Shown one piece after another: positions 54,560-57,500 of a stretch of DNA of 64,000 nt. The notes beneath the pieces were generated by a model, which did not search any database, was not told where the DNA came from, and was given only the letters and a program-made list of their open reading frames with translations. The position numbers and the translations under genes were made by a program. Source of the stretch: Diadema antillarum (taxonomy: Eukaryota); contig NW_027271365.1 in assembly GCF_040938485.1 (NCBI RefSeq), positions 434,001 through 498,000 on the forward strand, written 5' to 3'. Numbering within the stretch: the first letter of the stretch is position 1; the number at the start of each line of letters is the position of its first letter.

Positions 54560-57500
54560 CAGACTTTTGGACTGCACCGAGAAAGAAAGAAAGCTATAGC
54601 GCCCATAATGATATAGATAAAGGAACCTAAATCAAGTGTTCGGTAAGTATAAATCGGGAATTTCATCGCCCCACACGCACGGGCATGTTTGCCTGCCATT
54701 TGTCTAGATTGTCAGTATGAATAGAATAGTACTGTTGAATACCCATCCTGGGAATGAGGGATTGCAAACTGTAAGTACATCCATTCCTCATACTTTCTTT
54801 TTGAGAGACAAATCATCGTGCCTGAATGGCTCTGTTGCTATTGGAGCATACTGCGATCCTACTGATCAATTTACCGGTACCGGCTCTGTTTTCGTAAATT
54901 ATGCCCTGTATGTACCCAGAGTCGATACAAGCTCTTTGTTTGCAAGGTACATGTATGACCCAATCTGGAATTCGAGGTTTTCTAACAGAAACAAATTCCT
55001 GGACAACATTGTAACACTATATCATTCACCCGCAAGAGAGAAAGGACATATCCTACATCACCTCCAACCAAATCGAACCGTTGTAATGGGCCTGATCATG
55101 TGTTCAGGTGATGTTCAAATGAATCCTGGCCCTGTCCACAAACCCAGGCGCACTGAACCATGTCCCCTTTGTAGCAAATTAGTATTCAGCAAAAATAAAC
55201 TCAAATGTGAAGATTGCCAAGGATCTTTTCACCTCAGCTGTGCCGGAAAAACCCTCAAACAGGTCCAAACCTTAGCTGCAAATTCTACACCATGGTATTG
55301 TTCTAGTTGCTGTGCACCTTGCAGTGTGTGTGATGGTGACGTCTTGAGAGATCATCATGCAGTTCAATGCGACAGCTGTGATAAGTGGCTACACACAGCA
55401 TGCTGTAACATTGACTCCGATACGTATTTTTCACTTATGAATAGCTCTTGCAACTGGATTTGTCCTCAATGTGAAAATCTGTCCTTTTCTGGCTCATTCT
55501 TCAGCGTAGATCTAAACATCTCGTCTGAAAATCCCTTTGATGTTTTGAACTCCATAGACACTTCTCAGCCGACTTCGCCAAAAGATGTCTCACCTAAAAT
55601 GCCAAATCGAAATCTCACTAATTCTATTAAGACGAAGCGCCCAATGAATAAGAAGGACGACTTCAAGATACTTCTTACAAATTGTCAAAGTGTCAGATCT
55701 AAAGCCGGAGACATTGAGGTGCTCGTAGACTCTGTCAAACCTGATATCCTGTGTGGAACCGAGTCATGGTTAAACCCCAGCATCAACAGTAGTGAGATTT
55801 TTCCTGATCATTTCGATGTACACAGGAAAGACAGGACCCCACCGAAAATTGGAGGGGGGGTTTTCCAGGCTGTCAAACTGGACCTGGCTACTTCTCATTG
55901 CAGTGAATATAACTCAGATTGTGAGATTCTCTGGACTGAAACCAAAATTAAAGGCTGTAGGCCACTGCTCGTTGGAGTTTTTTACCTTCCACCCAACGAT
56001 AAAGGTGAAGCAATTGAGCACCTTGTGGAATCACTCACCAGAATAGGGCACAAAATTAACTCACATAATGTTATACTCACTGGGGACTTCAACTTGCCAA
56101 ATATCTCATGGTCTGATCACAGTGTTGAGAGTGGCAGTAACACTGGAGTTGCCGGTAAACTGATCTCCCTAGCTGAGGAATTTGGATTGTATCAACATGT
56201 TAGTTCTGCCACGAGAAGATATGGAAAAACTGAGAGTATACTTGATTTGGTCTTCACAAACAATCCTGAAATTGTACAGAAGGTCATATGTAGGGAAGGA
56301 ATTTCCGACCACGATGCTGTTGTAATCGATGTCAGAATCACTCCCTTCAGAAAACGTCCAACCAAAAGGAAAATATTTCTACGAAACAAGGCTGATGTAG
56401 AGGGTATCAAGCAATCACTCCATGAATTTGCTGAATATTATCGTAACAACTGTCTTGATTATGATGTGAACAGAAAATGGGAAGAGATTAAATCAAACAT
56501 TCTCTCAATAATGGAACGCCATGTGCCACATAAATTGTCTTCATCCCGCTTCAACCTACCTTGGTTCGACAGAACCCTGCGTCGTATGGTCAAGAAAAAA
56601 CAACGTTTGTACAATAAAGCTAGAAAATCGGAAAAACCAGCCGATTGGAAAATTTTCAGATCTTTTAGGAAATCCACCCACAAACTCATTAGGAAATCGC
56701 GGTCTTCCTACATCAGGAACACCTTAGGGTCTGCCCTGCTTGAAGAACCCAAACGTTTTTGGTCTTTTATCAAACGCCTTAATCAAGAAAGTTTTGGGGT
56801 CGCTGATCTTGATTTTGAGGGAAAGATAGTCAGCGAAGATCACCTAAAAGCCAATATACTTAGTGATCAATTTCAAAGTGTTTTCACGGTTGAACCTGAC
56901 GGTAACGTCCCCTTGCTTGGCGACAGTCCACACAAACAGATTGATCATCTTACTATTACTGAAGATGGAGTACTTAAATTACTCAAAGGTCTGAACTCTA
57001 ACAAATCTCCTGGCCCAGACGGCATACCTTCATGGTTCCTGAAAATTGGCGCCCAACAGTTAGCTATGCCACTACAAGACCTCTTCCAGTCATCGATCAA
57101 CTCCGGCATTGTCCCACAGGGATGGAAGGAGGCCAATATCGCTGCTGTCTTTAAAAAGGGCAACAGAAGATGTCCTGCTAATTACCGTCCCATCTCACTT
57201 ACATCGGTAGTGTGCAAAGTTATGGAACACATTATCCATAGTCACGTGATGAAACACCTTGAATCCCATAATATCCTCTCGGACGACCAACATGGCTTCA
57301 GGGCCAAGAGATCAACTGAAACCCAACTCATCTTAACCATACATGATATCAGCCATGAATTGAATAAAAACAACTTGGTTGATGCGGCACTGTTAGACTT
57401 CACCAAAGCCTTTGATAAGGTTCCACACCGCCGACTCATCTCTAAATTGAAATATTATGGACTTGACGGTGAGATATCCACGTGGGTCCGGAATTTTCTC

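What the first reader, a model, noticed from the sequence alone, without database searches (positions are those of the whole stretch)
55074..55133. 2A/StopGo-like ribosome-skipping motif inside the LINE ORF, with a non-canonical Q
Seen: aa 120-139 read RTVVMGLIMCSGDVQMNPGP, a hydrophobic stretch followed by D-V-x-x-N-P-G-P, placed exactly before the first PHD finger. Established: D(V/I)ExNPG|P peptides cause co-translational skipping in picorna-like viruses and occur near the N-terminus of some APE-type non-LTR elements of marine invertebrates. Inference: this single ORF could yield a 138-aa N-terminal peptide that I cannot assign to any family, plus a 1105-aa PHD-PHD-APE-RT protein starting at Pro. 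That would be a two-product design without an ORF1/ORF2 gap. Q at the usual E position may tune skipping to be partial.
Basis: partly seen in the sequence, partly recalled or inferred. Interest (0 to 1): 0.7.

Follow-up and report, generated by a model that had tools for sequence, protein, structure and literature searches.

The report
2A skipping peptide in sea-urchin LINE
The motif is a real, evolution-preserved "ribosome-skipping" (2A) peptide near the start of a jumping gene's single protein, a design already published for sea-urchin and other marine-invertebrate LINEs; the copy in this window has lost its 5' end, so its apparent start is not the native one.

Summary
The sequence is as described: aa 120-139 of a 1243-aa PHD-PHD-APE-RT ORF end in GDVQMNPGP, ten residues before the first PHD cysteine.

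- **Selection.** The motif is maintained at the protein level. NPGP is present in all 25 distinct LINE families sampled from this genome, with varying synonymous codons. It also occurs in relatives from other assemblies, including Strongylocentrotus purpuratus.
- **Prior knowledge.** This layout (2A, PHD, APE, RT in a single ORF with no ORF1) and substitutions at the Glu position were published by Odon et al. 2013. A Q-bearing sea-urchin LINE 2A was active there, and Q-to-E back-mutation gave no gain.
- **Q is ordinary.** It accounts for 138 of 668 motif hits in this genome and is fixed in this element's sublineage.
- **The window copy is 5'-truncated at 54731.** Its ATG comes from flanking DNA. 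The native leader is 163 aa, not 138.
- **The leader.** It is lineage-specific but conserved (51% identity to the S. purpuratus relative).
- **Beyond the finding.** Otherwise unrelated leaders share a hydrophobic, signal-peptide-like N-terminus, in 32 of 37 cases. I found no paper describing this.

Skipping activity itself is untested.

The parts
54731..58546 (+). 5'-truncated copy (3816 bp) of a ~4.6-kb single-ORF non-LTR retrotransposon. It lacks about 785 bp: the whole 696-nt 5'UTR and native codons 1-30.
   Evidence: blastn to other genomic copies starts at 54731 in every case and ends at 58546. Full-length copies share a further 785 bp upstream. The junctions are shown.
54717..54730 (+). 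Flank-derived ATG and first codons (MNRIV) that happen to open the frame. They are not part of the element.
   Evidence: No homology to any other copy upstream of 54731. Native copies start MGNMHKSEF... 25 codons further upstream in net terms.
54717..58448 (+). Open reading frame of 1243 aa: leader remnant, 2A, PHD, PHD, APE, RT.
55074..55133 (+). 2A/StopGo-like tract RTVVMGLIMCSGDVQMNPGP (aa 120-139), a hydrophobic stretch followed by GDVQMNPGP.
   Evidence: It is identical in all 11 same-family loci and 74% identical to the S. purpuratus relative.
55128..55133 (+). Predicted skip site: Gly138 codon GGC (55128-55130) | Pro139 codon CCT (55131-55133).
   Evidence: Position is by analogy with characterised 2A peptides. 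Not tested here.
55161..55310 (+). PHD-type zinc finger 1 (C149 C152 C164 C167 H172 C175 C195 C198).
   Evidence: Cys/His spacing read from the translation. Pfam PHD gives two stretches, and C1_1 gives a weak hit at 144-179.
55320..55472 (+). PHD finger 2 (aa 202-252).
   Evidence: Pfam PF00628, best stretch 202-252.
55680..56321 (+). APE-type endonuclease domain (aa 322-535).
   Evidence: Pfam PF03372 and PF14529.
57153..57887 (+). Reverse transcriptase domain (aa 813-1057).
   Evidence: Pfam PF00078, E = 1.1e-33.
58449..58546 (+). 98-nt 3'UTR ending in an (ACAGAT)3 microsatellite-like tail (58528-58546). There is no poly(A).
   Evidence: Full-length copies L031 and L033 have the same tail.

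Best explanation
The tract is a selectively maintained class-A 2A/StopGo peptide of a young, low-copy, single-ORF LINE family of a sea urchin.

In the native full-length element (~4.6 kb, 696-nt 5'UTR, no ORF1) translation starts at MGNMHKSEF. The ribosome makes a 163-aa leader that ends in ...GDVQMNPG. With the nascent hydrophobic-GDVQMNPG tract in the exit tunnel, the ribosome fails in some fraction of passes to form the Gly-Pro bond. It then releases the leader and continues from Pro, making the 1107-aa PHD-PHD-APE-RT protein.

The outcome is a separate leader peptide, and probably less downstream enzyme than leader. Skipping is most likely partial. The Gln at the usual Glu position is the stable state of this LINE sublineage, not a recent defect.

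The copy in the window is a 5'-truncated insertion. It has lost the promoter/5'UTR and the first 30 native codons. Its ORF is open only because the insertion is young (about 99% identical to the full-length copies) and because a flank ATG lies in frame.

Shown here: the anatomy, the truncation, the conservation and the protein-level selection. Inferred: that skipping happens, and its efficiency.
For: 1. Motif anatomy. G, D, V, N, P, G, P are at the canonical positions after a hydrophobic stretch.
2. Conservation within the family. The 20-mer is identical in all 11 same-family loci. There are 0 nonsynonymous and 1 synonymous change in codons 129-164 between the two subfamilies.
3. Conservation across families. 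All 25 distinct LINE motif contexts sampled from this genome keep NPGP directly before the PHD finger. D is present in 23 of 25 and V/I in 19 of 25, while the leaders are unalignable. The only sampled locus without NPGP, L044, is a truncated copy reading NQGP.
4. Protein-level selection. All four NPGP codons vary synonymously among families: AAT 14 / AAC 11; CCT 12 / CCA 10 / CCG 2 / CCC 1; GGC 10 / GGG 6 / GGA 6 / GGT 3; CCC 11 / CCT 7 / CCA 6 / CCG 1.
5. Other species. Relatives at 25-65% identity carry the motif at about aa 100-150. The 2A tract is 55-60% identical to P0001 and P0006, as conserved as RT (50-63%), while the leader aligns at 12-18%.
6. Q is stable. The window family, an S. 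purpuratus element and P0001 form a clade with SH-aLRT support of 100, and all three have DVQ.
7. No ORF1. The 5'UTR of full-length copies holds only uORFs of 35 codons or fewer.
8. Literature.
- 2A-PHD-APE-RT is described in S. purpuratus and B. floridae LINEs.
- E-to-Q/D/N variants retain activity.
- STR-69_SP (E-to-Q) was active, and Q-to-E gave no gain (PMC3708506).
- E14Q kept 56% or 26% activity in viral contexts (PMC12846837).
Against: - No translation experiment was possible.
- In deep mutational scans of FMDV and PTV 2A, no E14 substitution except E14H in P2A reached the 0.6 activity threshold. The two hydrophobic-cluster leucines were intolerant, and this tract reads L-I at those positions (bioRxiv 10.64898/2026.09.24.754024).
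- Several amphioxus CR1 2A-likes with largely canonical motifs were inactive in vitro.
- Only 7.4% of 2A peptides from reverse-transcribing elements were highly active in one screen.
- 59% of tested ORF2p-associated 2A-likes lowered protein abundance rather than skipping (PMC13405545).
- Some relatives with a PHD have no NPGP (P0009, P0011), so the motif is dispensable in some lineages.
- No RNA run was identified for this family.
- The window copy has no promoter of its own.
Confidence: 0.65

Rival explanations
1. Translational brake. The 2A-like tract mainly stalls ribosomes and lowers output of the PHD-APE-RT protein (self-restraint of the element, replacing the damping effect of a lost ORF1). 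Release of a separate leader is incidental or minor.
For: The published hypothesis is that 2A down-regulates ORF2p in single-ORF LINEs (PMC3894237; PMC3708506). 59% of tested ORF2p-linked 2A-like peptides fell in a 'reduced protein abundance' class (PMC13405545). The tract departs from the best viral context at E14 and L7.
Against: This is not exclusive of skipping. It does not explain why the leader upstream is itself conserved in this sublineage (51% identity, pN 0.31 against pS 0.73 to the S. purpuratus element). It also does not explain why leaders of unrelated families share an N-terminal hydrophobic segment. The abundance assays were done in human cells.
Confidence: 0.2
2. Recoding-inactive tract kept for another reason. 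The hydrophobic stretch plus NPGP would serve as a structural or membrane-targeting element of one uncleaved 1270-aa protein (for example a hairpin with the N-terminal hydrophobic segment), or as a fading relic.
For: Families such as HDTE(T/I/V)NPGP keep NPGP even though G11 and V13 are changed to residues not tolerated in viral scans. Many CR1 2A-likes were inactive in vitro. 76% of 2A tracts are strongly hydrophobic.
Against: NPGP is kept in every family sampled, with synonymous codon turnover, and the tract is as conserved as RT. That pattern matches the known recoding requirement, not a generic hydrophobic helix. An N-terminal membrane anchor on a nuclear DNA-nicking reverse transcriptase would be hard to reconcile with its function. 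Q, D and N variants from sea-urchin LINEs were active in vitro.
Confidence: 0.1
3. Chance occurrence of the motif in one ORF.
For: The bare NPGP coding pattern is not rare in 64 kb (34 of 100 shuffles).
Against: 3.3e-6 occurrences of the full motif are expected per ORF. There are 668 genomic hits against 0 in the reversed control. It sits at the same position in every sampled family and in other species.
Confidence: 0.01

Closest known systems
2A-like sequences of single-ORF APE-type non-LTR retrotransposons (Odon et al. 2013, Mol Biol Evol; S. purpuratus STR-24/25/34/35_SP, B. floridae CR1-1/17/26_BF, Crack-17_BF)
   Same: [quoted passage not shown] A PHD domain sits between 2A and APE. There is no ORF1. 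The Glu position is frequently substituted. The host is an echinoderm. The closest named relative is an S. purpuratus locus at about 65% identity.
   Different: The paper places 2A about 40-80 aa from the N-terminus. Here the native leader is 163 aa, and most families in this genome have leaders of about 100-120 aa. The RT clade of this family (CR1, L2, Rex1 or Crack) could not be assigned. The paper does not mention the hydrophobic N-terminus of the leaders (0 occurrences of 'signal peptide').
STR-69_SP (S. purpuratus L2-clade LINE 2A with E-to-Q)
   Same: Gln at the Glu position in a sea-urchin LINE 2A. It was active in rabbit reticulocyte lysate, and Q-to-E did not improve cleavage.
   Different: It belongs to a different element and clade, and its upstream tract is not available to me for comparison. 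Its activity cannot be transferred to this tract.
Viral class-A 2A peptides (FMDV F2A, TaV T2A, PTV P2A)
   Same: The layout is a hydrophobic cluster, then (A/S/C)-G-D-V-x-x-N-P-G-P. The G, D, V, N, P, G and P positions are identical.
   Different: Gln replaces E14, and Leu-Ile replaces the Leu-Leu pair. It lies near the N-terminus of a retrotransposon protein, not between viral polyprotein domains. E14Q gave 56% or 26% activity in viral contexts.
L1Tc / Ingi 2A of trypanosome non-LTR elements (Heras et al. 2006, as cited in PMC3708506)
   Same: An N-terminal 2A in a single-ORF APE-type LINE, proposed to lower ORF2p output.
   Different: The clade (Ingi) differs. In those elements 2A lies immediately before APE, without a PHD.
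N-terminal '2A-like signal sequences' of S. purpuratus NLR proteins (Roulston et al. 2016, PMC4981915)
   Same: Same phylum. A hydrophobic targeting signal is combined with StopGo, so that separated product stays cytosolic.
   Different: There one 26-aa peptide is both the signal and the 2A, at the extreme N-terminus of a host gene. In these LINEs the hydrophobic N-terminal segment and the 2A are separate, a median of about 84 residues apart among the 16 families of this genome (computed).

Membership tests
Class-A 2A/StopGo peptide (G-D-(V/I)-E-x-N-P-G|P with a hydrophobic upstream tract) | C-terminal N-P-G-P | tested here: met
   NPGP at aa 136-139. It is present in all 25 family contexts, with synonymous codon variation.
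Class-A 2A/StopGo peptide (G-D-(V/I)-E-x-N-P-G|P with a hydrophobic upstream tract) | G11, D12 and V/I13 upstream of the variable positions | tested here: met
   G131, D132 and V133.
Class-A 2A/StopGo peptide (G-D-(V/I)-E-x-N-P-G|P with a hydrophobic upstream tract) | Glu at position 14 | tested here: not met
   Gln134. This is a documented natural and mutational variant that is partially active: 56% or 26% in viral contexts, and active in STR-69_SP. No E14 substitution except E14H reached 0.6 in the F2A/P2A scans.
Class-A 2A/StopGo peptide (G-D-(V/I)-E-x-N-P-G|P with a hydrophobic upstream tract) | Leu-rich hydrophobic cluster 5-12 residues upstream of NPGP | tested here: inconclusive
   The tract VVMGLIMCS is hydrophobic but has L-I instead of L-L and only one Leu. 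Other families here have LLLL-type tracts.
Class-A 2A/StopGo peptide (G-D-(V/I)-E-x-N-P-G|P with a hydrophobic upstream tract) | Demonstrated failure of Gly-Pro bond formation during translation | not testable with these tools
   Needs a reporter translation assay or N-terminal sequencing.
2A-bearing single-ORF APE-type non-LTR retrotransposon (Odon et al. 2013) | APE endonuclease plus RT in one ORF | tested here: met
   Pfam PF03372/PF14529 and PF00078.
2A-bearing single-ORF APE-type non-LTR retrotransposon (Odon et al. 2013) | 2A-like tract in the N-terminal region, upstream of APE (optionally with PHD between) | tested here: met
   2A ends at native aa 163 of 1270. PHD fingers lie between 2A and APE.
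2A-bearing single-ORF APE-type non-LTR retrotransposon (Odon et al. 2013) | No separate ORF1 | tested here: met
   Full-length copies have a 696-nt 5'UTR with only 5 uATGs opening 5-35 codons.
2A-bearing single-ORF APE-type non-LTR retrotransposon (Odon et al. 2013) | RT phylogeny places it in Rex1, Crack, L2, L2A, CR1 or Ingi | not testable with these tools
   No Repbase/RTclass1 reference set was available. The microsatellite-like (ACAGAT)n 3' tail without poly(A) fits the CR1/L2 group from my own knowledge of those clades, but that is only a lead.
Secretory signal peptide at the leader N-terminus (considered for the native leader) | Uninterrupted hydrophobic core of about 8-15 residues within the first 30 or so residues, after a positively charged n-region | tested here: inconclusive
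   The native leader has AAVTLFVLARVLGGLL at aa 17-32 (Kyte-Doolittle 13-aa maximum 2.05), but with an Arg inside. The S. purpuratus homologue has a Lys at the matching place. Most other families have cleaner cores. No signal-peptide predictor was available. The window copy lacks this segment.

The most novel reading that the evidence does not exclude
The leader is a two-part device, not a spacer. An N-terminal signal-peptide-like hydrophobic segment would recruit SRP and take the translating LINE mRNA to the ER/nuclear-envelope membrane. The 2A, lying a median of about 84 residues further on, then cuts the nascent chain loose. The PHD-APE-RT protein would thus be made at that location but stay cytosolic/nuclear, on its own RNA. 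This would be a LINE counterpart of the SRP/ER-dependent localisation of yeast Ty1 RNA (PMC3945221). It would also explain why 2A and loss of ORF1 go together. The architecture is shown: 32 of 37 leaders, against 11.6 expected. The targeting function is pure inference. For the family in this window the hydrophobic segment is the weakest of those sampled in this genome (Arg-interrupted).
Probability: 0.2. Interest if true: 0.75.

Novelty: new member of a known kind. Interest (0 to 1): 0.4.

Why it matters
The 2A motif itself adds another well-documented example to a class known since 2013, so it is mainly useful for annotation in two ways:
- Gene models in sea-urchin genomes start such ORFs at internal methionines. 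The S. purpuratus model LOC115923809 begins inside the 2A tract, while the locus holds an intact ~1230-aa ORF with a homologous leader.
- 5'-truncated copies can mislead about the true N-terminus.

Two by-products are of wider interest:
- Gln, His, Asn and other residues outnumber Glu at the 'key' position among hundreds of selected LINE 2A motifs in one genome. This natural data set could help define what context makes non-Glu 2As work.
- Leaders that have diverged beyond recognition still keep a hydrophobic N-terminus at a fairly constant distance before the 2A. That makes the long-open question 'what is the 2A in LINEs for?' experimentally approachable through targeting and topology assays.

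Tried and rejected
- **Pfam on the native 163-aa leader:** no family even at E <= 10.
- **Word-index search restricted to leader residues 1-144:** 214 candidates, none scoring.
- **Exhaustive phmmer of the leader against 1.84 billion representatives:** one hit at E = 4.9e-4. It is a 26-residue match repeated six times in a repeat protein, and I judged it spurious.
- **ESM Atlas look-alikes:** no usable hit.
- **AlphaFold2, single sequence, native aa 1-280:** mean pLDDT 33, uninformative, so no fold search was run.
- **Expression:** no listed sequencing run is on record as RNA. Laying contigs of four runs showed only that near-identical copies exist in runs of three further coded organisms, with a LINE-typical rise in depth towards the 3' end. 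This gives no evidence for or against transcription.
- **Cross-species dN/dS of the leader:** synonymous sites are saturated (pS 0.6-0.97), so only pN < pS can be stated. The within-family estimate for leader codons 1-128 (0.53, from 5 synonymous and 9 nonsynonymous changes) has little power.
- **My first reading that the leader is an unconstrained orphan:** dropped after the S. purpuratus locus showed a homologous leader.
- **Target-site duplications:** none evident at the four copies inspected.
- **RT clade assignment:** not possible without reference elements.
- **Rejected:** chance motif; Q as a recent degenerative mutation.
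Full report
**1. Observation.**
The window holds one long ORF at 54717-58448 (+), 1243 aa.
- Residues 120-139 read RTVVMGLIMCSGDVQMNPGP, at nt 55074-55133 exactly as reported.
- Pfam finds two PHD stretches, the APE-type endonuclease (PF03372/PF14529) and RVT_1 downstream, and nothing in the first 140 residues.
- The first PHD cysteine is ten residues after Pro139.
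- The tetrapeptide coding pattern alone is not significant in 64 kb: 34 of 100 shuffles contain it.
- G-D-[VI]-x-x-N-P-G-P is expected 3.3e-6 times in an ORF of this composition.

**2. The window copy has lost its 5' end.**
- blastn of the region against ten other copies of the same family (96-99.6% identical) starts at 54731 in every case.
- Seven of those copies share a further 785 bp upstream with each other, beginning at one common point.
- Full-length elements are about 4.6 kb. They have a 696-nt 5'UTR holding only short uORFs, so there is no ORF1.
- Their 1270-1272-aa ORF starts MGNMHKSEF at an ATG in a good context (AACATGG). A 98-nt 3'UTR ends in (ACAGAT)3 without poly(A).
- The window's ATG (54717) and its first five codons are flanking DNA. 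Window residue 6 corresponds to native residue 31.
- The native upstream product is therefore 163 aa, not 138, and the downstream product is 1107 aa.
- The genome has 8 copies with the 5'UTR and at least 41 with the 3' end, the usual LINE truncation profile.
- The window copy's intact frame needs no selection, because it is about 99.3% identical to the full-length copies.

**3. The motif is under protein-level selection.**
- All 30 loci returned by a search with the first 228 residues carry a hydrophobic stretch plus xD(V/I/L/C)xxNPGP just before the PHD finger. This includes 20 loci from families only 31-48% identical.
- Twenty more loci with long LINE ORFs gave 19 with NPGP. The twentieth (L044) is a truncated copy reading NQGP.
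- Over the 25 distinct contexts, NPGP is 25/25, D is 23/25 and V/I is 19/25.
- The Glu position in those 25 contexts is E 15, Q 4, N 3, and A, K, S once each.
- These loci were found with a query that included the motif, so that sample is not unbiased. Three independent observations remove the concern:
  - The four NPGP codons vary synonymously among families.
  - The DNA pattern for G-D-[V/I/M]-x-x-N-P-G-P occurs 668 times in the genome against 0 for the reversed control.
  - Proteins from other assemblies at 25-49% identity carry the same tract at about residue 100-150.
- Region by region, the 20-residue tract is 55-60% identical to P0001 and P0006. That is as conserved as RT (50-63%), while the leader aligns at 12-18%.
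- Two relatives with PHD fingers lack NPGP, so the motif can be lost.

**4. The Gln.**
- Genome-wide, 138 of the 668 motif hits have Gln and 178 have Glu. Glu is therefore a minority state here.
- On a tree of the PHD-APE region, the window family groups with an S. purpuratus element (65% identity) and P0001. Support is 100 (SH-aLRT), and all three read DVQ. A further in-genome relative reads DVQV. Gln is thus an old, stable state of this sublineage.
- Odon et al. 2013 already noted heterogeneity at this residue in CR1-group LINEs. They found E-to-Q/D/N variants active, and saw no gain on mutating Q back to E in STR-69_SP.
- In viral contexts E14Q retains 56% or 26% activity. Recent deep scans score no E14 substitution above 0.6 except E14H in P2A.
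- The claim that Q tunes partial skipping is therefore neither new nor specifically supported. Partial activity is likely for many reasons, including the Leu-Ile pair.

**5. The leader.**
- It has no Pfam family.
- It has no scoring relative by word search, or by exhaustive phmmer, whose one hit I judged spurious.
- There is no Atlas look-alike, and the fold prediction was useless.
- Leaders of different families in this genome are mutually unalignable, apart from close relatives.
- Between the two subfamilies of this element, leader dN/dS is about 0.53 (5 synonymous, 9 nonsynonymous). The values are 0.11 for PHD and 0.16 for APE. There is no nonsynonymous change in the 36 codons around the 2A.
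- That looked like a weakly constrained orphan. The S. purpuratus locus behind protein P0002 changed this view.
  - The NCBI model starts at a Met inside the 2A tract. The locus has an open frame of 1261 codons with an in-frame leader of 128 aa.
  - That leader is 51% identical to ours over 108 aligned codons, with pN 0.31 against a saturated pS of 0.73.
  - It shares a strongly conserved block, DPIWNS-x-LSNRNKFLD.
  - P0001's leader aligns weakly to the same blocks.
- So the leader is a real, lineage-specific coding sequence under purifying selection.

**6. A shared leader architecture.**
- I set aside the last 25 residues, which hold the 2A tract. The most hydrophobic 13-residue window of the leader then lies within the first 35 residues in 32 of 37 leaders.
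- That is 16 of 16 families here and 16 of 21 from other assemblies. Uniform placement would give 11.6.
- A window with a Kyte-Doolittle mean of at least 1.9 occurs in 84% of the N-terminal 35-residue blocks. The figures are 7% for the rest of the leaders and 1% for 933 downstream blocks.
- Many look like classical signal peptides.
- In the window's family the segment is AAVTLFVLARVLGGLL (native aa 17-32), the weakest of the 16 families sampled in this genome. It is interrupted by Arg, and the S. purpuratus homologue has Lys there.
- The window copy has lost most of this segment.
- I found no paper in the searchable library that describes a separate hydrophobic N-terminus upstream of LINE 2As. 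That is not proof that none exists.

**7. Mechanism.**
- *Best supported (0.65).* This is a partially active StopGo site that releases the 163-aa leader and lets the ribosome continue from Pro into PHD-PHD-APE-RT. This is the published model for single-ORF LINEs.
- *Main rival (0.2), not exclusive.* The tract is chiefly a brake on ORF2p output.
- *Less likely (0.1).* It is a recoding-inactive tract kept for another role.
- *Excluded.* Chance.
- *Most novel reading not excluded.* A hydrophobic N-terminus plus 2A forms an ER-targeting-and-release device, for which Ty1 Gag/SRP offers a precedent in an LTR element. I give it about 0.2.

**8. Comparison and novelty.**
- The element meets the defining features of the 2A-bearing single-ORF APE-type LINEs of Odon et al. 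2013, except for RT clade placement, which I could not test.
- It meets the class-A 2A motif except for Glu14.
- It is a new member of a known kind.
- The scan had already flagged the same motif on other copies and families of this genome (s1-220821, s1-220812, s1-224710, s1-232532).

**9. Limits.**
- There was no translation assay, no RNA evidence and no signal-peptide predictor.
- Organism names were coded. 'Sea urchin' rests on the S. purpuratus best hit and on another scan note.

Noticed in passing
L031:1411-1500 (G000:C627), absent from the window copy; also L014-L053 and P0001-P0056: Leaders of 2A-bearing LINEs that share no sequence similarity nearly all begin with a strongly hydrophobic, signal-peptide-like segment in the first 35 residues (32 of 37, against 11.6 expected). 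In the 16 families of this genome it ends a median of about 84 residues before the 2A.
   Followed up: yes
L057:2144-2536 (S. purpuratus AAGJ06000014.1, reversed 23436207-23443770): The NCBI gene model LOC115923809 starts at a Met inside the 2A tract. The locus has a 1261-codon open frame with an in-frame 128-aa leader homologous to this family's leader, including the conserved block DPIWNS-x-LSNRNKFLD.
   Followed up: yes
G000:C137:11002-11027, 33420-33445, 91351-91376 and further hits on C137 (L055, L056): Repeated GDVEINPGP hits, some about 22 kb apart, are not LINEs. They sit in a short open segment reading MSLLTSGDVEINPGP, with the Met only 11 residues before the motif. This resembles the N-terminal 2A-like signal sequences of sea-urchin NLR genes; another scan note (s1-217779) reports an NLR first exon of this kind.
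   Followed up: partly
L043, L047-L050 (G000:C560, C530, C1940, C1508, C1376): A cluster of LINE families reads HDTE(T/I/V)NPGP, and one copy reads HDTKVNPGP. Gly11 is replaced by His and Val13 by Thr, changes not tolerated in viral 2A scans, yet NPGP and the leader (about 42% identity) are kept.
   Followed up: partly
L031:1547 (leader codon 46), in contigs of coded run X3 (organism B): A high-depth contig from another coded organism carries a 4-nt insertion (ATGT) in the leader that would shift the frame. The 2A tract shows no listed difference. It is one collapsed contig, so its meaning is unclear.
   Followed up: no
L034:3678-4957 (G000:C193:3323537-3324816): The subfamily-B copy (about 96% identical) carries roughly 1.2 kb of extra sequence inside the element, including a duplicated 78-nt piece. 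Its ORF is broken after 295 codons.
   Followed up: no
P0009, P0011 (other assemblies): Relatives at 36-39% identity have a PHD finger and a hydrophobic N-terminus but no NPGP. These are candidates for lineages that lost, or never had, the 2A.
   Followed up: partly
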